Part shown: piece after piece, positions 3,808 through 54,034 of the stretch | Layout: every line of letters starts with the position of its first letter | Position numbering within the stretch: position 1 is the stretch's first letter | NCBI RefSeq assembly: GCF_001194135.2 | Contig: NC_068997.1 | Span: forward strand, 31,966,472-32,030,471 | DNA from: Octopus bimaculoides | Lineage: Eukaryota | DNA: 64,000 nucleotides | Direction: 5' to 3' | The notes under the pieces: generated by a model | What the model was told of the DNA's origin: nothing | Database searches by the model: none | Seen by the model: only the letters and a program-made list of their open reading frames with translations | Translations under genes and position numbers: made by a program

Positions 3808-3853
<46 letters not shown>

Positions 3854-3946
3854 TCACACACACATTCATATCTACATGCAACTAATATTCTACGAGGTGT
3901 GGTGGTATGTGTGAGTGGGAGTTTAACATCAAATTTAAGCACTTAC

Positions 3947-4146
3947 CTATCACGCATGATGTTAGGGGGCTGGGGTAAGTATTTGTTATCTTTCAGGGCA
4001 GTGATGAGACTTTGGGGCCACGCTGAGTACGCTGACACTGGAGCCATTGTTGGTTGTGCTGAATGGTGCGGGGACCATGGTGAAACTTGACTGGTTGGGC
4101 TCTCTTCGCTCTTCACACGTTTGCTATGTAACCAGTCATCAGAACT
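3947..4146 (-). CDS. SKI: Downstream internal coding exon of the same Ski/Sno gene (200 nt, phase 0-2)
   Basis: Strong acceptor (ttaatctgttttctgtctttcag|AGT) and consensus donor (GAT AG|gtaagt). Translation SSDDWLHSKRVKSEESPTSQVSPWSPHHSAQPTMAPVSAYSAWPQSLITALKDNKYLPQPPNIMRD(R) resembles human SKI ...SAFRPWSP...LPALIRDS. Its start phase fits the phase-0 end of the 30619-30912 exon. Confidence 0.85.
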
Positions 4147-8317: not shown

Positions 8318-8815
8318 NNNNNNNNNNNNNNNNNNNNNNNNNNNNNNNNNNNNNNNNNNNNNNNNNNNNNNNNNNNNNNNNNNNNNNNNNNNNNNNNNNN
8401 NNNNNNNNNNNNNNNNNNNNNNNNNNNNNNNNNNNNNNNNNNNNNNNNNNNNNNNNNNNNNNNNNNNNNNNNNNNNNNNNNNNNNNNNNNNNNNNNNNNN
8501 NNNNNNNNNNNNNNNNNNNNNNNNNNNNNNNNNNNNNNNNNNNNNNNNNNNNNNNNNNNNNNNNNNNNNNNNNNNNNNNNNNNNNNNNNNNNNNNNNNNN
8601 NNNNNNNNNNNNNNNNNNNNNNNNNNNNNNNNNNNNNNNNNNNNNNNNNNNATATATATATATATATATATATAGTAATACAACCACCCGAGACTAGAAG
8701 CGCTACTACTCTACACTATGAGAGTTACCCTAACCCCCACAATCAACACTGACTATTATTACTAGTGTCCCCATGGCTACACGCACACGTGTGTGTGTGT
8801 GTGTGTATGTATATA

Positions 8816-9768: not shown

Positions 9769-10751
9769 NNNNNNNNNNNNNNNNNNNNNNNNNNNNNNNN
9801 NNNNNNNNNNNNNNNNNNNNNNNNNNNNNNNNNNNNNNNNNNNNNNNNNNNNNNNNNNNNNNNNNNNNNNNNNNNNNNNNNNNNNNNNNNNNNNNNNNNN
9901 NNNNNNNNNNNNNNNNNNNNNNNNNNNNNNNNNNNNNNNNNNNNNNNNNNNNNNNNNNNNNNNNNNNNNNNNNNNNNNNNNNNNNNNNNNNNNNNNNNNN
10001 NNNNNNNNNNNNNNNNNNNNNNNNNNNNNNNNNNNNNNNNNNNNNNNNNNNNNNNNNNNNNNNNNNNNNNNNNNNNNNNNNNNNNNNNNNNNNNNNNNNN
10101 NNNNNNNNNNNNNNNNNNNNNNNNNNNNNNNNNNNNNNNNNNNNNNNNNNNNNNNNNNNNNNNNNNNNNNNNNNNNNNNNNNNNNNNNNNNNNNNNNNNN
10201 NNNNNNNNNNNNNNNNNNNNNNNNNNNNNNNNNNNNNNNNNNNNNNNNNNNNNNNNNNNNNNNNNNNNNNNNNNNNNNNNNNNNNNNNNNNNNNNNNNNN
10301 NNNNNNNNNNNNNNNNNNNNNNNNNNNNNNNNNNNNNNNNNNNNNNNNNNNNNNNNNNNNNNNNNNNNNNNNNNNNNNNNNNNNNNNNNNNNNNNNNNNN
10401 NNNNNNNNNNNNNNNNNNNNNNNNNNNNNNNNNNNNNNNNNNNNNNNNNNNNNNNNNNNNNNNNNNNNNNNNNNNNNNNNNNNNNNNNNNNNNNNNNNNN
10501 NNNNNNNNNNNNNNNNNNNNNNNNNNNNNNNNNNNNNNNNNNNNNNNNNNNNNNNNNNNNNNNNNNNNNNNNNNNNNNNNNNNNNNNNNNNNNNNNNNNN
10601 NNNNNNNNNNNNNNNNNNNNNNNNNNNNNNNNNNNNNNNNNNNNNNNNNNNNNNNNNNNNNNNNNNNNNNNNNNNNNNNNNNNNNNNNNNNNNNNNNNNN
10701 NNNNNNNNNNNNNNNNNNATATACATACATAAATATATGCATTATATATAT

Positions 10752-13998: not shown

Positions 13999-14672
13999 TT
14001 AGTTATATTGGTAACAAAATATACATATTTACAACTCATACCCATTGACCATCCCACCCTGGATATTGTTCTCATTTCTTCTCACACATCCAGCTCACCT
14101 CAACCTCTATAAGTGTTTCTTTACACAACACTAATTTATATCATTTGGTGAATTTTAATGACGCCAGCCACAACTTCCTGAGCAACAATAAGCAACTGCA
14201 AGCATGGGCCAATGAGGAAGTTTGTATGTGGTCACTGCATCTGCTAGAAATAGCAGCAATCTTTAAAAAACAGGTAGGACATATTGAATGATGTAGCCCA
14301 AGATAAACTGTGATTGAAATGTCATCAGCCATAGGACTGCATGATGAGAGCTAACCTGGGGTTAAACAGCAAAGGACATTGCTATACAAGTCTATGATAC
14401 AAAAAACTCTCTGTGTGGTCAATTGTCTTGCTAAAAATAGCAATAAAATATCCTTAAAATCTGCTGTCTTAAAAAAAAAAAAAAAAAAAAAACAGAAAAG
14501 ACATAGTAGATAGTGTAGTCCAAGATTATTCATTAAATACAAGATGGTCATGGCTGGTATGCCTTTGATCATAAGTTTGCTCAGCCAAGATTAACCTAGA
14601 AAGAATAAATTCTCAACTACCAAGAATTACCTCCTTTAGAATCACTTCAAAAATCTCCACAACTGCAGACTC

Positions 14673-15006
14673 AAGTATGGCTGTCCAGTAAGATGTTTGC
14701 TTCCTAACTACATGGTTCTGAGTTTAGTCCCACTGCATGGCACCTTCAGCATGTATCTTCTACTATAGCCCACAAAATCCTTGCAAGTAAATTTGGTAAA
14801 CAGAAAGTGAAAGGAGCCCATTGTGTGTGTGTGTGTGTGTGTTAGTTTGTTTATGTCCTTGTAACTTAGCAGTTCAGCCAAAGACAACGAACAAATAAAA
14901 ACTAGGCTTTAGAAAAATGAGTCCTGGGATTGGTTCATTCAACTAAAAATTCTTCAAGTCAGTGCTCCAGTATGGTCGCAGTCTAATGAATGAAATCAGT
15001 AAAAGA
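14673..15006 (+). mobile_element. SINE family A, internally shortened
   Basis: Family A head, (TG)n and tail. Confidence 0.75.
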
Positions 15007-17083
15007 TAAAACTGCACTTCGACCACCACCACCACTGCACAACTACCTACACATATACTAAAATGTAAAACCAGTGCCAAACAATGCGATATGTTCTGAT
15101 ATAGCAATGCTGGCAGTTGTTTAAGTCCAGTTGGAAGCCTGCCATGCTTCACCACTACTACACCTTACTTTTTCCCACACCGCATTCTTTTATAAAGCCA
15201 TACCCCATTGCCTTAACTGAATATTGCTCCACCCTACTCTTCCAGCTCTGTCCGAACTACTTCATACAATCATATCACTCTACTTCACCACACACATTAC
15301 TCAGTAACCCACTATTATACACTACAACGTCCTAACCACACAAGCATAAAACCATGACACACCACACCGTTGTATAACAGTACACAATCAAACTGACACC
15401 TTACACTGGGGCAGGACACTTTCTTAAACCCCCCACATGGCTGCATTACATCACTCTGGCTTACATTTCACTAAACCTCTAAACAACACAACCTATTCTA
15501 CTCAAGACGACCATTCACTGCAGCACAAAATACTGTGGTGTATATATAATCTTAGACTGTGGTATGTATATAGAGAGGTACACAACGAAGTGTTTGCGTG
15601 TGTGTGTGTGTGTGTGTATACACACTTTAAGTTCGTTTATGGGAAATGTTTTGAAAATGCATATAAAAGCTCCCTATTTTTTTTATGTCAGCTATAGCCT
15701 GATGGCAAATGATGATACCAGTTTTTTGGGGTTGTACTGAGTTGTGCCGATATAATGTAGGACTAACCACTAAAACCCACTAAAATTTCAGGCCCTGTGC
15801 CTATAATAAAAAGATGTGTGTGTGTGTGTTATTTATATATTTATATATAATAGTAGAGTTCCATTATAGATAGAATCAACAAAAAAGTACTCCAACCAGG
15901 GTAAGATAAATATATATATATATGTATATGTATATACATACACATAAGGCTATGTGATTAACATATGTATTGGTAAAAGGTTATAGTGTATATAGAGTAA
16001 TAGTAGATGTGATATGTATATAGTAATAAATCCTGTGTATAGTATAAGAGAGAGAGAGTGAGTGAAAGAGAGAGAGAAATAGAGAGAGCATGGTATCGTA
16101 TATATTTATAGAGATGTGATATACAGTTTACCAGAAATGGAAGAGGAATGGATAATTGCCATATATAAATAGTATTTAGTTTCATTCATATAAAATTCCT
16201 GGTTCAAATCTCTGCAACATGTTACTTTTTATTTCCTTATCATCCTTTCTGTGGGGTTTTGATTAAAAAAAAATATTAGTAACATACTAATTAATTACAC
16301 TGTTTCCTCTGCAAAAGTTTGCATGGCCCCAGGTTACTACTACTACTACTACAGGGGTGGTAGTGTAAGTGACTAGTAAGTAAATATATTTAAATCTGAA
16401 TATCAGTTCCTTACATGTGAGTATGCTATGTGAGTTGAGATTCACACTCTACATAACATGCATGCATGCACACACGGCTATGAAGCTTTATAAGAGACTG
16501 AGGGGTTTCTGCTATTGCACAAGAATGTAAACATATATTTGTATATTTCGAAGACAGAGCTCCAGTATGGCCAGCATTATGATGGCTGAAACGAAAACAG
16601 AACAACAGATGCAAACACAAGCACATATACATACACACACGTCAATACACATACATTTAGATACCAAAAACTGAGATATACAAACAAGCCTATCTCCTGG
16701 CCTATCTCAAAGGGCAGTAACTCCAAATAACTTAGGCCATAATGTAAAATGATTATACACACAAACATGCATGCAAACATACATACATGCATGCATGCAC
16801 CCACATATATACATACATAAACGCACATTTATTTATATTTATTTATATATATATATTTCTAAGAAGCCACTTCTAAGTGCAGTATACAATGGAAAATACT
16901 AGAAGTGGAAGAAATGAAAACCATACAAAAGTGGTTGTCAAAACTATAATTCATGCACTGCAGAAAAAAGATTAATATTGAAATACGCAAGGGAATCAGA
17001 TGTTCACCATAATTCATAATTGAAATAAAAACTCAGAAAATGCAGTCATAAATAAAATAAAATATGTCCTGAAATCTTTGCTT

Positions 17084-21579: not shown

Positions 21580-21727
21580 TATATGGCTGTGTGGTTAAGA
21601 ACTTTGCTTCCCGACTGCATAATTTTGGGTTCAGTCCCACTGCATGAAACCTTGAGCAAATGTTTTCCACTTAGCCATCTGCCTCTTAGCTGACTTGTGA
21701 GTGGATTTGGTAGATGGAAACTGAGGG
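21580..21727 (+). mobile_element. SINE family A head
   Basis: GGCTGTGTGGTTAAGAAC...GGTTCAGTCCCACTGCATG...GGATTTGGTAGATGGAAACTG. Confidence 0.75.
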
Positions 21728-22008
21728 AAGTTTATTGCTTGTGAGTGTGTGTGCATGTGTGCACACATTTGGATTTTCCATGTTTTGAGATGGTACAATA
21801 GTCGTAAATGAGGTAAATGAACATTACTATCATACAGTGTCATTTCTTTTCAGTCTTCCAGGGAAATATGATGAACCTGAAGAAAATATTACCTAGTTGG
21901 GAGACAGATAAAGGTTGATGACAGGAAGGGCATCCAGACCTGCCTCAATGAATTCTGTTTGACCCATTTAAGCATGGAAAAGTGGATGTTAAAAAGCTGA
22001 TGTTCATG

Positions 22009-24845: not shown

Positions 24846-25183
24846 CTTTTACTTGTGTCAGTCATTAAATTGTGGCAATACTGAGACACTACCTTGAAAA
24901 TTTTAGTTACTTTTTTTATTCGAGCCAGAACTTATTCTATCAGTTTCTTATGCTGAACCGCTAAGTTACAGAGATGTAAACACACCAGCACCGGTTGTCA
25001 AGCAGTGGTGAGACACACACACATGACAGGCTTCTTTCAGTTTCCAGTTACCAAATCCAATCACAAAGCTTTCGTCAGCCCAAAGCTAAAGTAAAAGACA
25101 CTTGCCCAAGATGCCATGCAGTAGGACTCAACTGGAAACCAAATGGCTAGGAAGTGAGCTTCACAAATATTCAGCCACACTTG
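24846..25183 (-). mobile_element. SINE family A
   Basis: Reverse complement of family A. Confidence 0.75.
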
Positions 25184-28664: not shown

Positions 28665-29665
28665 ATATATTGTTGTGTCTGAAGAGAGTCATTCTCTTTT
28701 AGTGCCTTATTATTTAACACATGCTTCAACACACTAACTCACATAAANNNNNNNNNNNNNNNNNNNNNNNNNNNNNNNNNNNNNNNNNNNNNNNNNNNNN
28801 NNNNNNNNNNNNNNNNNNNNNNNNNNNNNNNNNNNNNNNNNNNNNNNNNNNNNNNNNNNNNNNNNNNNNNNNNNNNNNNNNNNNNNNNNNNNNNNNNNNN
28901 NNNNNNNNNNNNNNNNNNNNNNNNNNNNNNNNNNNNNNNNNNNNNNNNNNNNNNNNNNNNNNNNNNNNNNNNNNNNNNNNNNNNNNNNNNNNNNNNNNNN
29001 NNNNNNNNNNNNNNNNNNNNNNNNNNNNNNNNNNNNNNNNNNNNNNNNNNNNNNNNNNNNNNNNNNNNNNNNNNNNNNNNNNNNNNNNNNNNNNNNNNNN
29101 NNNNNNNNNNNNNNNNNNNNNNNNNNNNNNNNNNNNNNNNNNNNNNNNNNNNNNNNNNNNNNNNNNNNNNNNNNNNNNNNNNNNNNNNNNNNNNNNNNNN
29201 NNNNNNNNNNNNNNNNNNNNNNNNNNNNNNNNNNNNNNNNNNNNNNNNNNNNNNNNNNNNNNNNNNNNNNNNNNNNNNNNNNNNNNNNNNNNNNNNNNNN
29301 NNNNNNNNNNNNNNNNNNNNNNNNNNNNNNNNNNNNNNNNNNNNNNNNNNNNNNNNNNNNNNNNNNNNNNNNNNNNNNNNNNNNNNNNNNNNNNNNNNNN
29401 NNNNNNNNNNNNNNNNNNNNNNNNNNNNNNNNNNNNNNNNNNNNNNNNNNNNNNNNNNNNNNNNNNNNNNNNNNNNNNNNNNNNNNNNNNNNNNNNNNNN
29501 NNNNNNNNNNNNNNNNNNNNNNNNNNNNNNNNNNNNNNNNNNNNNNNNNNNNNNNNNNNNNNNNNNNNNNNNNNNNNNNNNNNNNNNNNNNNNNNNNNNN
29601 NNNNNNNNNNNNNNNNNNNNNNNNNNNNNNNNNNNNNNNNNNNNNNNNNNNNNNNNNNNNNNNNN

Positions 29666-29840: not shown

Positions 29841-29998
29841 ATAGGTATGGCTGTGTGGTAAGACACTTGCTTCCCAACCACATGGTTCATTGTTTAGTTC
29901 CATTGCATAGCACCTTGGGCAAATTACTATTAAGGCCTCAGGCTGACCAAAGCCTTGTGAGTAGATTTTATCGATAGAAACTGCAAGAAGCTCATGGT
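29841..29998 (+). mobile_element. SINE family A head
   Basis: GGCTGTGTGGTAAGACACTTGCTTCCCAACCACATGG...ACCAAAGCCTTGTGAG. Confidence 0.8.
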
Positions 29999-30214
29999 AT
30001 GTGTGTTTATGGCCTTGTAATGCGACTATAGTCAAAGCACTTGAATATCACAGGCTTTGTTTATTAAACTATTGATGGGTACTGCAGAGAGAAGAGGAGA
30101 AAAAGAGAAAGAGGCAGACACATAGTCTGACCATCTGTAAATAGCTACAGTACTTCATACTACAAATAGGTGTACCTTGAACAATCACATTCTATATAGC
30201 TGCAATTAGGTACT

Positions 30215-30440
30215 GATGCTAGTGCCATGTAAAAAGCACTGGTGATGGTGCTACGCAAAGAAGCATCTGTAAAGTAGTTGGCATTAGGAATGGCATCCAG
30301 CTGTAGAAGCCATGTCAAAACAGACTATGGACTCTGGTGTGGCTCCTGGCCTTGCCAGTTCCGGTCAAGCCATCTAACTCATGCCAGCATGGAAAATGGA
30401 TGTTAGATGATGATGATGATGGTGATGATGATGATGATGA
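30215..30440. mobile_element. Family E retroposon end, about 180 nt downstream of the Smad4-binding exon donor
   Basis: GGCATTAGGAATGGCATCCAGC...CCATGCCAGCATGGAAAATGGATGTTAGATGATGATG. Confidence 0.7.
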
Positions 30441-30618
30441 TGAAAGAAATATTACAAGTAAAACTAGGGATACAGCTCTACATAGGTTCTATGGATTGAA
30501 GCAATGTGCAAATGTCCAAACCTACAGAATCCCTCAGAGCCATGTGATATGGTAAGGAAAAAAAACATCATTACTAGACTAGAATAAATAAATGTCAATG
30601 AGACAAGCAAATACTTAC

Positions 30619-30912
30619 CTGTTTTCGTTTTGTCTTACATCCATCAAACTTGTTCTTTATCTGATCAATGATGTCTTGGCATTTTTCTAGATTTTCTTGA
30701 TCTTTGGCAAGCATCAAATAGTTCCGCCAATGCGCAGAATCAAACCCCCAATGGCATATACGGTTCTCCATTGGGGTGTGTGAGTGACAAACAAATTGTT
30801 GTGGGTTAAAAAGTGCGTGGCATTCAGTGCAATAGATGCACTCAGCGTCCGGTGTATGATAGCGATCTGGTTGGATAATTCCTTTGCATTTGCCAAAACA
30901 TTCGTGATAGAC
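30619..30912 (-). CDS. SKI: Internal coding exon of a Ski/Sno-family co-repressor: SAND-like c-SKI Smad4-binding domain (98 aa, phase 0-0)
   Basis: Manual minus-strand translation: VYHECFGKCKGIIQPDRYHTPDAECIYCTECHALFNPQQFVCHSHTPMENRICHWGFDSAHWRNYLMLAKDQENLEKCQDIIDQIKNKFDGCKTKRKQ. It matches human SKI VYHECFGKCKG...CIQCLDC...KFVVHSH..ENRTCHWGFDSANWRAY as recalled. The C-x2-C/H-x-H zinc ligands and the CHWGFDS Trp are kept. HECFGKCKG is Ski/Sno-type, not SKOR-type (HECAWGCRG). Boundaries are tag|GTC and CAG|gtaagt; 294 nt; an in-frame TAG sits immediately upstream. Confidence 0.96.
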
Positions 30913-30914
30913 CT

Positions 30915-30918
30915 ATTT

Positions 30919-30955
<37 letters not shown>

Positions 30956-31336
30956 CAATGTTTGTATGCATAAATAAATATAGTGTATGTTTGGAAACAA
31001 GTTGAAGCAAATTCAATTAAGTTCAGCATCAGTTCAAGTTGGTAGTCAATTGGTTGGTTGGTTGTCCAAATGGATTGAAGAAGAATCCAGTTTCAAGAGG
31101 TGATGAGACACACCGAAGTGATGAAAAAGAAAAGAAAAAAAACAAAAACACAATGTTATTAATATGGAATTAACAGAATGATTTGTATATGTGATGGTGG
31201 ATAGAAGTGAAAGCAAAGAAAGGATATGATGAGATGGAGATGAAAAAGAGGAAAAGTGAAAAAAATGTGAAAGAAAGAAATGCAGATGAGGGAAGAGAAA
31301 GCAATATGAGTGAAATGAAATGATAACACATTAAAA
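30915..31336 (-). promoter_or_regulatory. 422-nt AG-exclusion zone with distant polypyrimidine tract and candidate distant branch point
   Basis: No CT on the plus strand (AG on the sense strand) between 30914 and 31337. Sense pyrimidine tract at about 31120-31325, ttttaat branch-like motif at about 31330-31336, A34 at 30922-30955. Confidence 0.7.
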
Positions 31337-31689
31337 CTTACATAAACTCCAGAACACCTAGTTCTAGCTAAAGCTACAGCATAATGCAAATAAATACAAA
31401 CATAAAAGGATAAACGTGTGAAATCCAAGTAAAGACTCAACACATTAACACACATACAACAAGCACTTTAACACAAACAACATACAGAAACAGTGACTAA
31501 TGTACAAACACATATAAACATAAACCCAATGTGAACAGACACAACAATGACAAAAATACACGCAAAAACAATTATCATATTTACCAGTATTGAAATGTAA
31601 CGGAGAACTAGTTATCTAGTTGTTGGTTAGAGTTATTATATTTATAACTGAGATGTTTGAGAAAAGACACCAACACTAATACATCCTTT

Positions 31690-31975
31690 ATCATTTACAC
31701 CACTAATACCCTCTGGAGAGGTACCAACATCACTACATTGTACCTGAACCATATTTACACCTCCCAAATTTATAACATGTAAACAGGTATGTAAATATCA
31801 CCACGTCCTCTTTTAGCCATGCTTCCACCACCCACATTACTAATCACCTTTGGACTGGGATAAATATCACTACATCATCTCGTTTGATTCATATCACTAA
31901 CTTTTGGATAGGTATGAACATCTAGTTTTGACCATATGTACACCACTCACATGTTTTGGACAGGTATGAACATGA
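31690..31975. repeat. Degenerate minisatellite, about 5 units of 50-70 bp
   Basis: Recurring TTTGGA(C/T)AGGTATGAACATCACTACAT...ACCATAT(T/G)TACACCACT. Confidence 0.65.
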
Positions 31976-33560
31976 AGTCCCTACCAAGAATCACTTCACT
32001 AAGAATCTCCAGAAAAGCAAAAACATCACCACAACACGTCAAAGCACAACCTAAATACGTCTAAGACTGAATCTGTATAAAAGATATAACAAAGAAGCCT
32101 GCATGTGGCAACTCAAACAGGTAAAATTACCTGAAAAATCTTATGTTCATCCTAATGACTTAAAAATAGACTAAGACTAGCTACCATAGACTGCTAGAGT
32201 ATAAATGCGTAAGTCTTTTTTTGTTTTTTGTTTTTTTTATTTTTTATCATATCAAAAGCTAAGTCTATTCAAAGTTTCACCTCAGGCTGGGTTGTTTACA
32301 ATGTGGGATAGAATAAATTTTTGGCAGTTTATACAAAGGTATGTTGACCTTGGAAGGATGTGTGTCAGTGGAGTGACGCTTTTGAAAACTAATTTTAAAA
32401 TGTAGAGATTGTAATGGAAAGATATTGTTATGGTGTTGGGAAGTATGAATGGGTTGGGATAATCCTTACCTCTATTCATTGTCACATTATCAACCAAATT
32501 AATTGAAATTATTAGAAGAATAGTTAAATTATTACAGATCACTTTTGTACTGGTTCACATACAAGGACTTCATTGATAGTCTTAAAAAGAAGTTAAAGAC
32601 ATTGTTCATGAATTAGTCTCACAAGTTTTTCCTATTATAGCCCTGGACTGACCAATGTCTTATGAGTGAATTTTTTTTAGACAAAAACTTGAAAGAAGCC
32701 CATCGCACGCACATGCATTCGTGTGTGTATGTGTGTGGGTATGTGTGCACTACTATCTCTTTGCCTTGATTTCATACGGCAGATGAAAATGAATATTACT
32801 GTTATGCAAGCAATATTATTTATTTCTAATCTTCTATGAAAATATGTCTGGTCAGGAAGAATAATAAATTACTTGGAAACAGATGAAGGTTGGTGACAGC
32901 AAAGACATCTGGTAGTAGAAAACTGGCCTTCAGATTCTATCCATCCCATGCACTCATGGAAAAGTGGATGTTAAATGGTGACATAACACACACACATGCA
33001 AATAGATACATATACTTGAAGTCTTACATCATAGATACACATTTATACATACACACTTTACTAGTTTGTTTAAAAATTAACACCAACTCAAATGCACACA
33101 CACACCAACATACACATATCTATATGCATACACACACGCATACATATAGAATGCTATGATATGTTCAATTAATCCTATAAATACTTCTATACCGATTTCT
33201 CACTGGAGTGGTACATAGAGTGACAAAAGGTGCTTATGGAGTGATGTGAGGGTATATGGAGTGTTGTGTGGTTATGTGAAGTGCACAGTTGTGAGCAATG
33301 GTATGTCACATGCAAAAGTATAGAGTGGTGGAGTACTTGTCAGTGTGTGAGATGGTGTAGTTGTGTTGGGCCGTGTGCAATAGAGTGGTACTGACAGATC
33401 AGAGTTATTGGTCAGAGCAGAACACTCTATTACCACCATCAACACCACACGTACCCACACTGACTTCAATGCCACTTCCAGTGATACCTGAAGTTGAAGG
33501 TACAAGGCCTTCTCATCCATCATTCACACTTGCTCCATATAAAAATTAAGACTTTTTACC

Positions 33561-33884
33561 TTTTATTCGTTTCAGTCATTAGATTGTGGTCATACTGGGG
33601 CACCGCCTTGAGCAGATTTAGTTGAATTAATCAACCCCAGGACTAATTTTCTTCTTAAGCTTGGGACTTATTCTATCATCTCTTTTGCTAAACTACTAAA
33701 TTACAGGGACATAAACACACACACGATGAGTTTTTTTCAATTTCCGTCAACCAAATCCGCTCACAAGGGTTTGGTCAGCCTGAAGGCTATAATAGAAGTC
33801 ACTTGCCCAAAGTGCCATGCAGTGGGAGTGAACCCAGAACCATGTGGTTGAGAAGCAAGCTTCTTACCATATAGCTATGCCTGT
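33561..33884 (-). mobile_element. SINE family A
   Basis: Reverse complement of the family A head and tail. Confidence 0.8.
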
Positions 33885-35804
33885 ACCTGTGCCTATATTC
33901 ACACAGCCACTCTTGTGCCTATGTATATATATATATATTTTTTATTAATGTTTCAGATGACCTCTACAGGAATGTGTGCATATGTGAAAACTGTGTTATT
34001 AACGGTCCATATGTTAGGAGTAGGACCAGGGTTTCTATCCAGTAACATATGGTAGAGGGTAATGGGGTCCAGAGTCTCCCTCTCTCTCTCCCTTGCACTT
34101 AGCAAGTGTATCTTCACCTGTGTTCTACAGTAAGAGTTACTGTCAATTACTGCTAGAAGTTGAAGGTAATTAGACCATCTTATACAACAATCCTCATCAT
34201 TATAGTTATCATCACCACCACCATTATTATTATTATTATTATTACTACTATTATTATTATTATTATGATTATTATTATTATTATTAATATTATAGTTGTC
34301 ATCATCATCATTATTGTCCAAGAAGAGCATTACCTGTGTTAATCTCACCAATCTCAGAAGGTTGCAAAAGACATGGACACAACCTCTTCCACTCCCCAAC
34401 CAAACCAATAAATATGTTTTTAATTATCATCATCATTGTTTTCATCATCCTTATCAACATATACTACAGCCTGGCAATCATTAATACACTACACCAGATG
34501 ACCGAACAATTTCTTCTCCACACTCCACTCAATGTTTCACCTTCATCCTTAATGTAAAATGACAAATGGTTGGCAGGCTTGATGCCATATGATATAATCA
34601 GTGCATGTGTGTGTGTGTTCTGATCTGATGCACCAGCTCGTCATCCCTCCAAGCTACAAAAGTAGCTCACTACTAAAGCTGATTGACATCTACCATGTCA
34701 CATTTAGAGATCTACTGTCAGCAGACCATATACAACTCTGTCATAAGCAGTAGCTTCTCCACTCTCACAATTATCTAATACACTACTGCCTTGCAGGGTC
34801 TTCACAATAAAAACTAGCTGAGATTCTACTACACCAATGAAGAAGAACCAAATCAATGCAGATATCTTACTTCACCATTCCTTATTGTATTTCAACAGAC
34901 AAACCAAATATTCTAGGTATTTCACCTCTAAGATTGCCTTGTATTCAAATTAAAAACCTTCCAAATAATTTTTAAACATTTTTGTTGTCACATTCTATAT
35001 ATACAACAAATTAATTAATTTGATATTACTAAATCCCTTATCATGATTATTTTCAAAAGTAATTGAATTACATATGCAGTATATTTCATTAGATTATATA
35101 TCTATGAATGAGTTAAACTCTGCAATCTGAGTTATACACTGCCAATCAACACTGACCTTTGACATTCTCTACTACAATTTTAACATTCTTTACAATGTCT
35201 TTCTCTCACTCTTTCTATTTCTCTCTCTCTCTCTCTCTCTCTCTNNNNNNNNNNNNNNNNNNNNNNNNNNNNNNNNNNNNNNNNNNNNNNNNNNNNNNNN
35301 NNNNNNNNNNNNNNNNNNNNNNNNNNNNNNNNNNNNNNNNNNNNNNNNNNNNNNNNNNNNNNNNNNNNNNNNNNNNNNNNNNNNNNNNNNNNNNNNNNNN
35401 NNNNNNNNNNNNNNNNNNNNNNNNNNNNNNNNNNNNNNNNNNNNNNNNNNNNNNNNNNNNNNNNNNNNNNNNNNNNNNNNNNNNNNNNNNNNNNNNNNNN
35501 NNNNNNNNNNNNNNNNNNNNNNNNNNNNNNNNNNNNNNNNNNNNNNNNNNNNNNNNTTTTTTTTTTTTTTTTTTTTTTTTCCCCAGGCAGAACATATCAA
35601 GTTCTACATTATCCAGTTGTTTTGAAGGTTTCTTTTAACCTTTAAATGGTTGGTTATGAATTTAGAGGAGGACTGCTATATCTAACATAGTGTCTCCCTT
35701 GTCCACTTTGGTTATTCTTCCTGTCATGTAGGATGTAAATCTATAAATGTCTTCCAAGCCCTAAGGGTTCTTTAGGAGTCAAATGCTTAGTTCATGACAT
35801 TAAG

Positions 35805-38225: not shown

Positions 38226-38616
38226 TTTTACTTGTTTCAGTCATTAGACTGTGGCCATGCTGGAGCACCACCTTGAATCATGTTTAGTCAAATGGACTGA
38301 AATCAGTACTTATTTTTTTCAAAACCTTGTACTCATTTTATTGGTGTCTTTTTTCTGAACCACTAAATTACAGGGACATAAACACACCAACACCAGTCGT
38401 CAAACTGTGATGCTGAACAAAAGTAGAAACAAAGACACACACACACACACACACACACACACGGGCTCCTTTTCAATTTGTCTACAGATCTACTCACAAT
38501 GTTTTGGTTAGCCTGAAGTTATAGTTGAAGATACTTGCCTAAGGGGCCATACAGTGGGACTGAACCTAAAACCATGAGGTTAGGAAGCAAATCTCTTATA
38601 ACACAGTCACACCTGC
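38226..38616 (-). mobile_element. SINE family A
   Basis: Reverse complement of 53641-54034. Confidence 0.8.
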
Positions 38617-39809: not shown

Positions 39810-40850
39810 TCATACAGACATATATACATATATACACATATATACATATACACAAATATACACATACATATACATACACATATATACATACACATATATA
39901 CATACACATATATATACATACATATATACATATACATACACACATATATACATACATATATATACATATATATACACATATACATATATACATATATATA
40001 CATACAAATACATATATACATATATATACATACAAATATATACATATATATACATACACATACATATACATATATATATACACATACATATACATATATA
40101 TATACACATACACATACATATATATATATATACACATACATATACATATATATATATATATACACATACATATACATATATATATATACACATACATATA
40201 CATATATATATATATATACACANNNNNNNNNNNNNNNNNNNNNNNNNNNNNNNNNNNNNNNNNNNNNNNNNNNNNNNNNNNNNNNNNNNNNNNNNNNNNN
40301 NNNNNNNNNNNNNNNNNNNNNNNNNNNNNNNNNNNNNNNNNNNNNNNNNNNNNNNNNNNNNNNNNNNNNNNNNNNNNNNNNNNNNNNNNNNNNNNNNNNN
40401 NNNNNNNNNNNNNNNNNNNNNNNNNNNNNNNNNNNNNNNNNNNNNNNNNNNNNNNNNNNNNNNNNNNNNNNNNNNNNNNNNNNNNNNNNNNNNNNNNNNN
40501 NNNNNNNNNNNNNNNNNNNNNNNNNNNNNNNNNNNNNNNNNNNNNNNNNNNNNNNNNNNNNNNNNNNNNNNNNNNNNNNNNNNNNNNNNNNNNNATACAT
40601 ATATATACATATATATACATACATATATATGCATACAAATATATACATATATATATATATACATACATATATACACATACATATATATATACATATATAC
40701 ACATATACATACATATATATACATACATATACACAAACACATACATAAACATACATATATATACATACATATATATTCATACATATATACGCATACATAT
40801 ATATATTCACACATACACATTCATACATATACATACATAACGATATATTA
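39810..40850. repeat. Long compound (TA/CA) low-complexity satellite with an internal gap
   Basis: TATACA/TACA/TA units throughout. It explains the YI/HI/YT ORFs. Confidence 0.95.
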
Positions 40851-41778: not shown

Positions 41779-42203
41779 NNNNNNNNNNNNNNNNNNNNNN
41801 NNNNNNNNNNNNNNNNNNNNNNNNNNNNNNNNNNNNNNNNNNNNNNNNNNNNNNNNNNNNNNNNNNNNNNNNNNNNNNNNNNNNNNNNNNNNNNNNNNNN
41901 NNNNNNNNNNNNNNNNNNNNNNNNNNNNNNNNNNNNNNNNNNNNNNNNNNNNNNNNNNNNNNNNNNNNNNNNNNNNNNNNNNNNNNNNNNNNNNNNNNNN
42001 NNNNNNNNNNNNNNNNNNNNNNNNNNNNNNNNNNNNNNNNNNNNNNNNNNNNNNNNNNNNNNNNNNNNNNNNNNNNNNNNNNNNNNNNNNNNNNNNNNNN
42101 NNNNNNNNNNNNNNNNNNNNNNNNNNNNNNNNNNNNNNNNNNNNNNNNNNNNNNNNNNNNNNNNNNNNNNNNNNNNNNNNNNNNNNNNNNNNNNNNNNNN
42201 NNN

Positions 42204-49085: not shown

Positions 49086-49481
49086 TTTGTTTCAGTCATT
49101 TGACTGCAACCATGCTGGAGCACCACCTTAAAGGATTTTAGTTGAAGGAATCAACCCCACAATTTATTCTTTGTAAGTCTGGTACTTATTCTACCAGTCA
49201 CTTTTGCCGAATTGCTAAGTTACAGGGGCGAAAGCACACCAGCATCGGTTGTCAAGCAAAGGCGGGGGGGGGGCAAACACAGGCACACACACACATGAAC
49301 ACACACATGAACACACACACACAATGGACTTCTTTCAGTTTCTGTCTACCAAATCCACTCACAAGGGTTTGGCCAGCCTGAGGCTACAGTAGAAGACACT
49401 TGCCCAAGATGCCATGCAGTAGGGCTGAACCCAGAACCATGTGGTTGGGAAGCAAACTTCTTACCAGACAGCCATGCCTGT
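49086..49481 (-). mobile_element. SINE family A
   Basis: Reverse complement of 53641-54034. Confidence 0.85.
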
Positions 49482-53411: not shown

Positions 53412-53640
53412 NNNNNNNNNNNNNNNNNNNNNNNNNNNNNNNNNNNNNNNNNNNNNNNNNNNNNNNNNNNNNNNNNNNNNNNNNNNNNNNNNNNNNNNNN
53501 NNNNNNNNNNNNNNNNNNNNNNNNNNNNNNNNNNNNNNNNNNNNNNNNNNNNNNNNNNNNNNNNNNNNNNNNNNNNNNNNNNNNNNNNNNNNNNNNNNNN
53601 NNNNNNNNNNNNNNNNNNNNNNNNNNNNNNNNNTACAGGC

Positions 53641-54034
53641 ACAGGAGTGGCTGTGTGGTAAGAAGCTTGCTTTCCAACCACATGGTTCCAGGTTCAGTCC
53701 CATTCCATGGCACCTTGGGCAAGTGTCTTCCACTTATAGCCTTGGGCCAACCAAAGCCTTGTGAGTGGATTTGGTAGGCGGAAACTGAAAGAAGCACATC
53801 ATGTGTGTGTGTGTGTGTGTGTGTGTATTTGTTGTTTGTGTCTGTGTTCGTCTCTCCACTATCACTTGACAACCGACATTAGTGTGTTTTACATCCCTGT
53901 CACTTAGCAGTTCGGCAAAAAGAGACCAATAGCATAAGTACTAGGCTTACAAAGAATAAGTCTTGTGGTTGATTTGTTTGACTAAAGGTGGTGCCCCAGC
54001 ATGGCCACAGTCAAATGACTGAAATAAGTAAAAG
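53641..54034 (+). mobile_element. tRNA-derived SINE family A, near full length
   Basis: A-box-like TGGCTGTGTGG, B-box-like GGTTCAGTCCC, internal (TG)n, tail ...GCATGGCCACAGTCAAATGACTGAAATAAGTAAAAG. At least ten copies occur in the window. Confidence 0.85.

What the first reader, a model, noticed from the sequence alone, without database searches (positions are those of the whole stretch)
30913..31338. Smad4-binding exon acceptor has an A34 tract instead of a pyrimidine tract, inside a 422-nt AG-free zone
Seen: the sense strand reads ...cattg(A)34tcaaaatag|GTC, so the last ~45 nt before the AG are almost all purine. There is no AG for 422 nt upstream (next at 31338/31337), while AGs are frequent just beyond. 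A ~200-nt pyrimidine tract lies at 31120-31325 behind a ttttaat motif. Established: long AG-exclusion zones mark distant branch points, where the first downstream AG is found by scanning, and they are enriched at alternatively spliced exons (e.g. tropomyosin, alpha-actinin). Inference: this exon uses a branch point ~400 nt upstream and is likely regulated. In a cephalopod, A-to-I editing of AA to AI within the zone could also create a competing acceptor. I know of no such arrangement for a Ski gene.
Basis: partly seen in the sequence, partly recalled or inferred. Interest (0 to 1): 0.8.

Follow-up and report, generated by a model that had tools for sequence, protein, structure and literature searches.

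The report
Octopus Ski exon, far-upstream branch site
The exon of an octopus Ski gene that encodes the Smad4-binding domain is spliced at an AG preceded by 34 adenines and 422 AG-free bases, which most likely marks a branch point hundreds of bases upstream: a rare but already known kind of splice-site layout.

Summary
On the minus strand, A34 (30955-30922) sits 10 nt before tAG|GTC (AG at 30914-30913). The next upstream AG is at 31338-31337, leaving 422 AG-free nt. This is the longest of 6741 N-free AG-to-AG gaps in the window; the next longest is 243. About 7 AGs are expected from local composition (P<=1e-3).

mRNA contigs from 11 RNA runs of organism A match exactly 30619-30914, then continue into ...VDPPSPSSFK|VYHEC; two RNA runs of a close relative (organism B) stop at the same coordinates. 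So this acceptor is the one used. The exon is 30912-30619: 294 nt, c-SKI Smad4-binding domain, Pfam E=4e-35.

Organism B reads A12-TTTCAAAATAG at this acceptor. No pyrimidine tract is hidden there, and the A-run length is not conserved.

A distant branch point is the best-supported reading but is not mapped. My top candidate is UAUUAAU at -247 with the U-rich tract 31151-31122. UUUUAAU at -419 remains possible. A proximal branch point at -59/-63 needs a P~0.002 coincidence.

"Regulated exon" is not supported: no skipping contig in four runs. The editing idea was not tested. One run carries a precise exon-end-to-exon-start junction, probably a circRNA, and inverted repeats flank the exon.

Verdict: a new member of a known kind (distant-branch-point exons); moderate interest.

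The parts
30619..30912 (-). Exon of 294 nt (98 codons, phase 0/0) encoding the c-SKI Smad4-binding domain, VYHECFGKCKG...KTKRKQ
   Evidence: Pfam PF08782 E=4e-35. PDB 1MR1 Ski chain E=1.9e-32. mRNA contigs of 11 organism-A RNA runs and 2 organism-B RNA runs match exactly 30619-30914.
30913..30914 (-). Acceptor AG (tAG|GTC); it is part of the in-frame stop TAG
   Evidence: mRNA contigs diverge from the genome here. The loose end reads ...CAGCTTCA+AG|GTC = ..SSFK|VYHEC. Only the 2-nt AG is ambiguous, and the canonical reading puts the junction after 30913.
30915..30921 (-). tcaaaat, the 7 nt between the A tract and the AG; with the AG it gives 5 purines at -10..-3
   Evidence: identical in organism B
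30922..30955 (-). A34 homopolymer occupying positions -43 to -10, where a pyrimidine tract normally lies
   Evidence: Organism B has A12+TT here, 20 nt shorter.
30915..31336 (-). AG-free zone of 422 nt
30956..31120 (-). Mixed-composition middle of the zone. It carries most of the statistical signal (5.8 AG expected, 0 seen) and holds the branch-site-like motifs AATTGAC (-134), AACTGAT (-117), ACTTAAT (-105) and TATTTAT (-63/-59).
31122..31151 (-). Strongest U-rich tract of the zone (uguguuuuuguuuuuuuucuuuucuuuuuc); candidate functional polypyrimidine tract
   Evidence: In the minimum-free-energy fold it pairs with A34, but the fold is no better than shuffles.
31158..31175 (-). Branch-site candidates TGTTAAT (A at 31170, -258) and TATTAAT (A at 31159, -247); the latter can pair with U2 at 6 of 6 positions
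   Evidence: No listed difference in organism B, although differences in 31111-31168 were masked by junk depth.
31190..31325 (-). C/U-rich tract with many yUnAy motifs (TTCAT, CTCAT, TTCAC) and 7 UCUU / 8 UUCU motifs
   Evidence: The organism-B insertions here are almost all sense-strand pyrimidines.
31330..31336 (-). TTTTAAT branch-site candidate (A at 31331, -419) at the 5' edge of the zone; TTTTAAC in organism B
31337..31338 (-). First AG upstream, the boundary of the zone; conserved in organism B
30613..30618 (-). Consensus donor CAG|GTAAGT of the exon
   Evidence: mRNA contigs end at 30619
4146..4146 (-). First base of the next exon. Its acceptor is canonical (ccttaatgaccttaatctgttttctgtctttcAG, AG-free zone 37 nt). 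The downstream intron is 26.5 kb.
33700..33882 (.). Interspersed repeat copy in the upstream intron, inverted relative to the copy at 29843-30021
29843..30021 (.). Interspersed repeat copy in the downstream intron, 0.6 kb from the exon, inverted relative to 33700-33882 (78% identity over 183 nt)

Best explanation
This is a distant-branch-point 3' splice site. Inferred: U2AF and U2 snRNP assemble on a branch site and pyrimidine tract 190-420 nt upstream of the exon. The best candidate is UAUUAAU with its branch A at 31159 (-247), followed by the U-rich tract 31151-31122. The alternatives are UGUUAAU (-258) and UUUUAAU (-419) with the long C/U tract. Inferred: after the first catalytic step, the spliceosome uses the first AG downstream, which is tAG at 30914-30913. 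That is why the whole interval must stay free of AG, and why a sequence as unlike a pyrimidine tract as A34 is tolerated next to the AG. The A run acts as a slippage-prone spacer that cannot create an AG unless an A mutates to G. The consensus donor CAG|GTAAGT probably helps exon definition. Shown: the acceptor is used; no proximal pyrimidine tract exists in two organisms; AG depletion is significant; A-run length changes (34 versus 12) do not change the junction.
For: Acceptor use is seen in 11 organism-A and 2 organism-B RNA runs. AG-free 422 nt: the largest of 6741 gaps, with about 7.2 AG expected. If the branch point were at -59/-63, the AG-free stretch upstream of it would be chance, with P=0.002. 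For -105..-134 that P is 0.006-0.02; for -192..-258 it is 0.14-0.33. The conventional window of -18 to -44 is pure A. The next acceptor of the same gene is fully canonical, so this organism uses ordinary signals. Organism B keeps the layout (A12TTTCAAAATAG), and no listed difference creates an AG in 31050-31336 or 30915-30987. Three changes at candidate branch sites keep the yUnAy form, and two move it toward the consensus (TTTTAAT>TTTTAAC, CTCAT>CTGAT); the third is TTCAT>TTAAT. Human precedents have AG-free zones of the same size and verified distant branch points: PTB exon 11 (381) and nPTB (438) (PMC1431707). Purine-rich 3' splice sites go with more distant branch points (PMC6339879).
Against: No branch point was mapped. 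All RNA evidence is from assembled contigs, which cannot show lariats. The zone is G-poor and low in complexity, so part of the AG absence is compositional. The comparison with organism B has little power: about 9-12% of random substitutions would create an AG, and 0 of about 15 did (P~0.3). In addition, 62 nt (30988-31049) are not covered by any organism-B contig. In organism B the weak motif UAUUUAU lies at -39/-43, a conventional distance. The exon shows no alternative splicing, unlike most known distant-branch-point exons.
Confidence: 0.62

Rival explanations
1. The branch point is proximal or moderately distant. The weak motif UAUUUAU just upstream of the A run (A at 30975/30971; -63/-59 here, -43/-39 in organism B) is used. 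The 3' splice site works without a pyrimidine tract, through U2AF35-AG contact and strong exon definition from the consensus donor. The long AG-free zone would then be a by-product of low-complexity sequence.
For: The motif fits yUnAy. In organism B the shorter run puts it at a conventional distance. G content in the zone is only 6.6%. The donor is a perfect CAG|GTAAGT.
Against: It requires an AG-free 360 nt upstream by chance, P~0.002. Only about 9 of the 37 nt between this motif and the AG in organism B are pyrimidines. The motif pairs poorly with U2, with a U at the position before the branch A. About 3 differences fall in the 27 nt next to the run in organism B, so the segment is no better conserved than its surroundings.
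Confidence: 0.13
2. The branch point lies at mid distance, in the cluster AATTGAC / AACTGAT / ACTTAAT (-134, -117, -105), followed by the modest pyrimidine stretch uuugcuucaacuuguuucc (31010-30993).
For: Three R-containing yUnAy motifs lie within 30 nt, with a short pyrimidine stretch downstream.
Against: It still needs P=0.006-0.02 for the AG-free sequence upstream. The pyrimidine stretch is weak. The segment 30988-31049 holding these motifs is the one part for which no organism-B contig aligned at 80% or more, so it may not be conserved.
Confidence: 0.12
3. The arrangement is a regulatory switch. PTB-like proteins on the C/U tract, pairing of A34 with the U tract, or ADAR editing of AA to AI in the A run would control inclusion of the exon or choice of acceptor.
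For: There are 7 UCUU and 8 UUCU motifs in the tract. The minimum-free-energy fold pairs A34 with 31150-31122. Known distant-branch-point exons are mostly regulated (PMC1431707).
Against: No skipping contig in four runs. The linear junction is identical in 11 runs and no alternative acceptor contig was seen. The fold is weaker than shuffles, z=+1.4. An RNA contig over 30934-31700 shows no differences from the DNA. Editing very rarely alters splice sites in octopus (PMC9699675). Contigs drop rare isoforms, so low-level events are not excluded.
Confidence: 0.1

Closest known systems
Distant-branch-point exons with extended AG exclusion zones (Gooding et al. 2006, PMC1431707): alpha-tropomyosin exon 3, alpha-actinin, PTB exon 11 (zone 381, branch point -351), nPTB (zone 438, predicted -389), GABBR1 exon 23
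   Same: A used acceptor lies behind a zone of several hundred AG-free nt. There is no credible branch site or pyrimidine tract in the last 40 nt. Branch-site motifs and a long pyrimidine tract sit in the upstream part of the zone. The zone size (422) is within the known top range.
   Different: The organism is a cephalopod and the gene is Ski. The spacer next to the AG is a 34-nt adenine homopolymer that varies in length between close relatives. No alternative splicing of the exon is seen. The branch point is not mapped.
Purine-rich 3' splice sites / REPA elements between the pyrimidine tract and the 3' AG (Nguyen and Xie 2019, PMC6339879)
   Same: The pyrimidine tract is separated from the AG by a purine-rich element. 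The site has 5 or more purines at -10..-3. [quoted passage not shown]
   Different: The described regulatory class is defined by G tracts bound by hnRNP H/F. Here there is no GGG, only A, and the separation (about 208 nt from the U tract to the AG) is far larger than the tens of nt typical there.
Single-exon circular RNAs formed by back-splicing between long introns that carry inverted repeats
   Same: A precise exon-end-to-exon-start junction at the canonical sites in one run. The flanking introns are more than 33 kb and 26.5 kb. Inverted repeat copies lie 2.8 kb upstream and 0.6 kb downstream.
   Different: Seen in 1 of 11 runs only. Circularity is not shown (no RNase R or read-pair evidence). 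The 4-nt AGGT microhomology leaves a small chance of template switching.
Vertebrate SKI / SKIL Smad4-binding (SAND-like) domain, PDB 1MR1 and 5C4V
   Same: 51% identity to my recalled human SKI sequence over the domain. 1MR1 aligns over 90 residues, and the Pfam model is matched over almost its full length.
   Different: From my own knowledge, not checked here: in human SKI this domain is encoded within the large first exon together with the Dachshund-homology domain. Here it is a separate 294-nt exon between very long introns.

Membership tests
Distant-branch-point exon (AG-exclusion-zone class, Gooding 2006) | AG exclusion zone of 100-150 nt or more immediately upstream of the acceptor | tested here: met
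   422 nt, the largest of 6741 gaps in the window
Distant-branch-point exon (AG-exclusion-zone class, Gooding 2006) | The AG at the 3' end of the zone is the acceptor actually used | tested here: met
   mRNA contigs of 11 organism-A and 2 organism-B RNA runs
Distant-branch-point exon (AG-exclusion-zone class, Gooding 2006) | AG absence exceeds what base composition gives | tested here: met
   7.2-8.5 AG expected; P(0) at most 1e-4 by block shuffles, about 7e-4 by the local Poisson model
Distant-branch-point exon (AG-exclusion-zone class, Gooding 2006) | No good branch site or pyrimidine tract at the conventional position, and a good pair in the upstream part of the zone | tested here: met
   Positions -43..-10 are A34. 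TATTAAT (-247) lies before U tract 31151-31122, and TTTTAAT (-419) before the C/U tract.
Distant-branch-point exon (AG-exclusion-zone class, Gooding 2006) | Branch adenosine mapped far upstream (lariat evidence or mutagenesis) | not testable with these tools
   Only assembled contigs were laid.
Distant-branch-point exon (AG-exclusion-zone class, Gooding 2006) | Zone conserved in orthologous introns | tested here: inconclusive
   Organism B has no AG created in 31050-31336 or 30915-30987. However, 62 nt are uncovered, some differences are masked, and power is low (P~0.3).
Distant-branch-point exon (AG-exclusion-zone class, Gooding 2006) | Exon alternatively spliced (typical of the class, not strictly defining) | tested here: not met
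   Only one upstream partner for the downstream exon in four runs. Contigs can miss minor isoforms.
Purine-rich 3' splice site / REPA (Nguyen and Xie 2019) | 5 or more purines between -10 and -3 | tested here: met
   a t c a a a a t at -10..-3 gives 5 purines
Purine-rich 3' splice site / REPA (Nguyen and Xie 2019) | G tract (GGG) between the pyrimidine tract and the AG (REPAG subclass) | tested here: not met
   No G at all in the last 41 nt
c-SKI Smad4-binding domain | Match to Pfam PF08782 above the gathering score, and to solved Ski/SnoN domains | tested here: met
   120.3 bits against a cutoff of 25; 1MR1 E=1.9e-32 and 5C4V E=2.5e-23
Ski/Sno family gene | Dachshund-homology (Ski_Sno) domain upstream in the same transcript | tested here: inconclusive
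   No such exon in the window.
Back-spliced single-exon circRNA | Junction joining the exon's donor to its own acceptor | tested here: met
   58-nt contig in X16 at depth 16.7. The exon body depth of 32.1 is close to the sum of linear 13 and back-splice 16.7. Absent in 10 other runs.
Back-spliced single-exon circRNA | Circular topology (RNase R resistance, divergent read pairs) | not testable with these tools
   contigs only
Retroposon poly(A) tail as origin of the A tract | Target-site duplication and other copies of the upstream sequence | tested here: not met
   No direct repeat of 9 nt or more of the post-tract sequence within 7 kb upstream. The zone is not repeated in the window. Organism B has A12TTT.

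The most novel reading that the evidence does not exclude
The variable-length A tract and far-upstream branch site would make linear use of this acceptor slow. Together with the flanking inverted repeats, that would divert the 294-nt frame-preserving exon into a circular RNA, which reached half or more of exon-containing molecules in one sample. Such a circle has no stop codon and two in-frame AUGs, so it could in principle encode concatenated Smad4-binding domains or lower functional Ski mRNA. A-tract length (34 versus 12 in the relative) would tune this. ADAR editing of the A run into AI acceptors would be a further layer.
Probability: 0.06. Interest if true: 0.7.

Novelty: new member of a known kind. 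Interest (0 to 1): 0.38.

Why it matters
If the branch point is indeed 200-400 nt upstream, this would be, as far as my limited literature searches show, the first distant-branch-point exon described in a cephalopod, with a zone as long as the longest human cases. The two related octopuses offer a natural experiment: a 20-nt change in the spacer next to the AG leaves the junction untouched. That is what the first-AG-after-the-branch-point rule predicts. In practice it also shows that gene predictors fail here. The public model of this gene is a 127-aa fragment with an unsupported first exon and read-through into the downstream intron. Any A-to-G change in the 34-nt run would create a competing acceptor. 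The finding does not change how splicing is understood.

Tried and rejected
1. Read laying on 19.7 kb failed seven times (include the repeats).

2. I searched the window for the Dachshund-homology exon and for the 32-nt end of the upstream exon. Both are absent, so the upstream intron is longer than 33 kb.

3. The first exon of the UniRef model P0001 (33520-33455) is contradicted by the mRNA contigs. A look-up of P0001 in the assemblies found nothing.

4. Retroposon-tail origin of A34: no target-site duplication and no other copy.

5. A structure bringing the branch point close to the AG: A34 pairs with the U tract in the minimum-free-energy fold, but z=+1.4 and 92 of 100 shuffles fold at least as well.

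6. Exon skipping: none seen.

7. The idea that RNA coverage of the zone reflects oligo-dT capture at A34: control intron stretches are also held by RNA runs, so it is ordinary pre-mRNA.

8. The protein search returned only five relatives and no other cephalopod, so no orthologous introns beyond organism B could be fetched.

9. The exact A-run length could not be confirmed, because contigs built from 31-nt words cannot cross it.

Full report
**What is there.** The gene lies on the minus strand. The sense strand reads ...cattg(A)34tcaaaatAG|GTCTATCACGAATGT....
- The A run is 30955-30922 and is the longest homopolymer in the window.
- The acceptor AG is 30914-30913. It is part of an in-frame TAG, so the reading frame cannot extend upstream.
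- The exon runs 30912-30619 (294 nt, 98 codons, phase 0 at both ends) and ends in a consensus donor, CAG|GTAAGT. This corrects my first coordinates by 2 nt.
- Its translation matches Pfam c-SKI_SMAD_bind over nearly the whole model (E=4e-35, 120 bits against a cutoff of 25). It also matches the Ski chain of PDB 1MR1 (E=1.9e-32).
- It is 100% identical to a UniRef protein of Octopus bimaculoides.

**The AG-free zone.**
- The next AG upstream is at 31338-31337, so 31336-30915 (422 nt) contains no AG.
- Among 6741 AG-to-AG gaps on both strands that do not span N runs, this 424-nt spacing is the largest. The next is 243 and the median is 10.
- AG density is 5.5 per 100 nt in the kilobase upstream, 4.4 in the exon and 6.2 in the downstream intron.
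- The zone is G-poor (6.6%), so part of the effect is compositional. Even so, shuffles that keep composition in 20-100-nt blocks give 7.3-8.5 AGs and almost never zero. A local-composition Poisson model gives 7.2 expected.
- The signal is uneven. The pyrimidine-rich part 31336-31121 (77% C+T) would lack AG by chance about one time in five. The mixed 165 nt 31120-30956 expect 5.8 AGs and have none, while holding 8 GA.
- All 28 Gs of the zone follow T, G or C, never A.

**Is the acceptor used?** Yes.
- Logan contigs from 11 RNA runs of organism A match the genome exactly from 30619 to 30914 and then diverge. The runs are X19, X20, X16, X11, X15, X17, X18, X12, X26, X36 and X38, from at least six studies.
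- The upstream loose end reads, in sense...CAGTTGACCCCCCATCACCCAGCAGCTTCA followed by AG|GTC. That is ...VDPPSPSSFK|VYHEC, and it reproduces the FK-VYHEC motif of the relatives P0002-P0004.
- Only the two letters AG are shared between the upstream exon end and the intron end. The canonical reading places the junction at tAG|G.
- Two RNA runs of a second organism (coded B) have contigs with the same ends and an identical exon.
- That upstream exon end is not in the window, and no Dachshund-homology exon is either. The upstream intron therefore exceeds 33 kb.
- The downstream partner begins at 4146, giving a downstream intron of 26.5 kb.
- That next acceptor is textbook: two CTTAAT motifs at -29 and -20, the tract ctgttttctgtctttcAG, and an AG-free zone of 37 nt. 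So the organism uses ordinary signals, and the Smad4-exon acceptor really is an exception.

**Is the A tract an artefact?**
- DNA contigs from three organism-A samples (X1, X27, X31) run from the exon 21-22 T into the tract and stop. An RNA contig enters it by 22 from the other side. None crosses it. This fits a run longer than the assembler's 31-nt word, but it does not confirm the number 34.
- The DNA run X10 of organism B gives a 550-nt contig that does cross. Its sense strand reads cattg(A)12TTTCAAAATAG|GTC, 20 nt shorter.
- So no pyrimidine tract is hidden here in either organism, and the A-run length is evolutionarily labile while the junction stays the same.

**Where is the branch point?** It was not mapped; what follows is inference.
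- The conventional window (-18 to -44) is pure A, which cannot pair with U2 or bind U2AF65 (established knowledge).
- yUnAy motifs occur throughout the zone. I weighed each by how improbable the AG-free sequence upstream of it would be if unconstrained:

| Candidate position | P that the AG-free stretch upstream is chance |
|---|---|
| -59/-63 | 0.002 |
| -105 to -134 | 0.006-0.02 |
| -192 to -258 | 0.14-0.33 |
| -419 | 1 |

- The zone therefore argues for a branch point upstream of about -190, but it hardly separates -247 from -419.
- On motif quality, UAUUAAU (branch A at 31159, -247) can pair with the U2 branch-recognition sequence at all six positions, two of them G-U. Nine nt later it is followed by the strongest U tract of the region, uguguuuuuguuuuuuuucuuuucuuuuuc (31151-31122). 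UGUUAAU at -258 is a neighbour.
- I put about 0.6 on a branch point between -190 and -420, about 0.12 on the -105..-134 cluster and about 0.13 on -59/-63.

**Comparison with organism B.**
- A 689-nt contig covers 31050-31420 with 17 substitutions and 27 inserted letters.
- Applying the 15 substitutions and 13 inserted letters that the tool listed leaves the boundary AG at 31338-31337 in place and creates no AG in 31050-31336.
- The inserted letters are nearly all sense-strand pyrimidines.
- Three changes fall in candidate branch sites. Two move them toward the consensus: TTTTAAT to TTTTAAC and CTCAT to CTGAT. The third, TTCAT to TTAAT, keeps the yUnAy form.
- The power of this test is low. Only 9-12% of random substitutions would create an AG, so zero of about 15 has P~0.3.
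- Differences in 31111-31168 were masked by junk depth, and no organism-B contig aligned to 30988-31049. I call conservation of the zone consistent but not shown.

**Regulation.**
- In four runs the downstream exon has only this exon as upstream partner, and all 11 runs share one linear junction. The data give no sign of exon skipping or an alternative acceptor, though contigs drop rare forms.
- The predicted pairing of A34 with the U tract is no better than shuffles (z=+1.4).
- The RNA contig over 30934-31700 shows no differences from the DNA.
- A survey in Octopus vulgaris reported that A-to-I editing very rarely alters splice sites (PMC9699675).
- The editing idea therefore stays untested speculation.

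**Comparison with what is known.**
- Gooding et al. (PMC1431707) defined this class in humans. They found 165 exons with zones of 150 nt or more, including PTB exon 11 (zone 381, branch point -351) and nPTB (zone 438, predicted -389). They showed that AGs inserted in such zones disrupt splicing.
- Nguyen and Xie (PMC6339879) described purine-rich 3' splice sites, in which elements separate the pyrimidine tract from the AG, and linked them to more distant branch points. The present site meets their purine criterion but has no G tract.
- The octopus site therefore works like, and by the sequence criteria belongs to, the distant-branch-point class. The one defining feature still missing is the mapped branch point.
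- What is unusual is the adenine homopolymer next to the AG, its length change between relatives, and the apparently constitutive use of the exon.

**Seen in passing.**
- Run X16 alone holds a 58-nt contig that joins the exon's last 30 nt directly to its first 28 nt, at the canonical sites.
- Depths add up: the exon body at 32.1 is close to the upstream linear junction at 13 plus this junction at 16.7. That suggests half or more of exon-containing molecules in that sample carry it.
- A back-spliced circular RNA is the likeliest reading. The shared AGGT at both sites leaves a small chance of template switching.
- The exon is flanked by inverted copies of a roughly 180-nt interspersed repeat (33700-33882 and 29843-30021; 78% identity), the usual setting for back-splicing.
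- Because 294 is a multiple of three, and the exon has no stop but two in-frame ATGs, such a circle would have an endless reading frame.

**Verdict.** A distant branch point is the best explanation (confidence about 0.6), but its position near -400 is not established. Regulation and editing are unsupported. It is a new member of a known kind, of moderate interest.

Noticed in passing
window 30619-30912 (junction 30619 joined to 30912), run X16: A 58-nt RNA contig joins the exon's end directly to its own start at the canonical splice sites. Depth is 16.7 against 13 and 8.8 for the linear junctions and 32.1 for the exon body. This is probably a single-exon circular RNA. It is absent from 10 other RNA runs. 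The circle would have no stop codon and two in-frame ATGs.
   Followed up: partly
window 33700-33882 and 29843-30021: Inverted copies (78% identity over 183 nt) of an interspersed repeat flank the exon, 2.8 kb upstream and 0.6 kb downstream. The same family has further copies near 14680-15010, 21583-21761, 25013-25162, 38226-38614, 49279-49479 and 53640-53823.
   Followed up: partly
window 33455-33520 and 30595-30618: The public 127-aa protein model (P0001, UniRef, Octopus bimaculoides) starts with an exon MDEKALYLQLQVSLEVALKSVW that no mRNA contig supports. It ends by reading into the intron (VSICLSH*). The real transcript continues upstream with ...VDPPSPSSFK, encoded outside the window, and downstream at 4146.
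   Followed up: yes
window 30922-30955 compared with organism B (run X10): The adenine run is 34 in this genome but 12 (followed by TT) in a closely related organism whose intron is about 93-95% identical. DNA contigs of three samples of the same species all stop 21-22 bases into the run, which might reflect length heterogeneity or sequencing drop-off.
   Followed up: partly
window 30988-31049: No contig of organism B aligned here at 80% or more, and its contigs end on both sides (about 30987 and 31050). This suggests an indel, a repeat boundary or strong divergence, exactly where the mid-zone branch-site-like motifs lie.
   Followed up: no
window 30406-30445 and 3815-3870: The downstream intron has a (CAT)n-type microsatellite that attracts very high junk depth from RNA contigs. 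A (TA)n/(CA)n microsatellite follows the next exon.
   Followed up: no
window 31697-32034: Four degenerate copies (64-74% identity) of a 42-nt unit, spaced 53-137 nt apart, lie in the upstream intron just beyond the AG-free zone.
   Followed up: no
window 14471-14492 and 35557-35580: There are two more long A/T homopolymers. On the pre-mRNA they would be U22 in the downstream intron and A24 (next to an assembly gap) in the upstream intron. U22 could in principle pair with A34 across the exon.
   Followed up: no
window, 13 N runs (e.g. 8318-8651, 9769-10718, 28748-29665, 40223-40594, 41779-42203): There are 4060 N in 13 gaps, so this is a draft assembly. All AG-free gaps longer than the finding's span such N runs.
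   Followed up: yes
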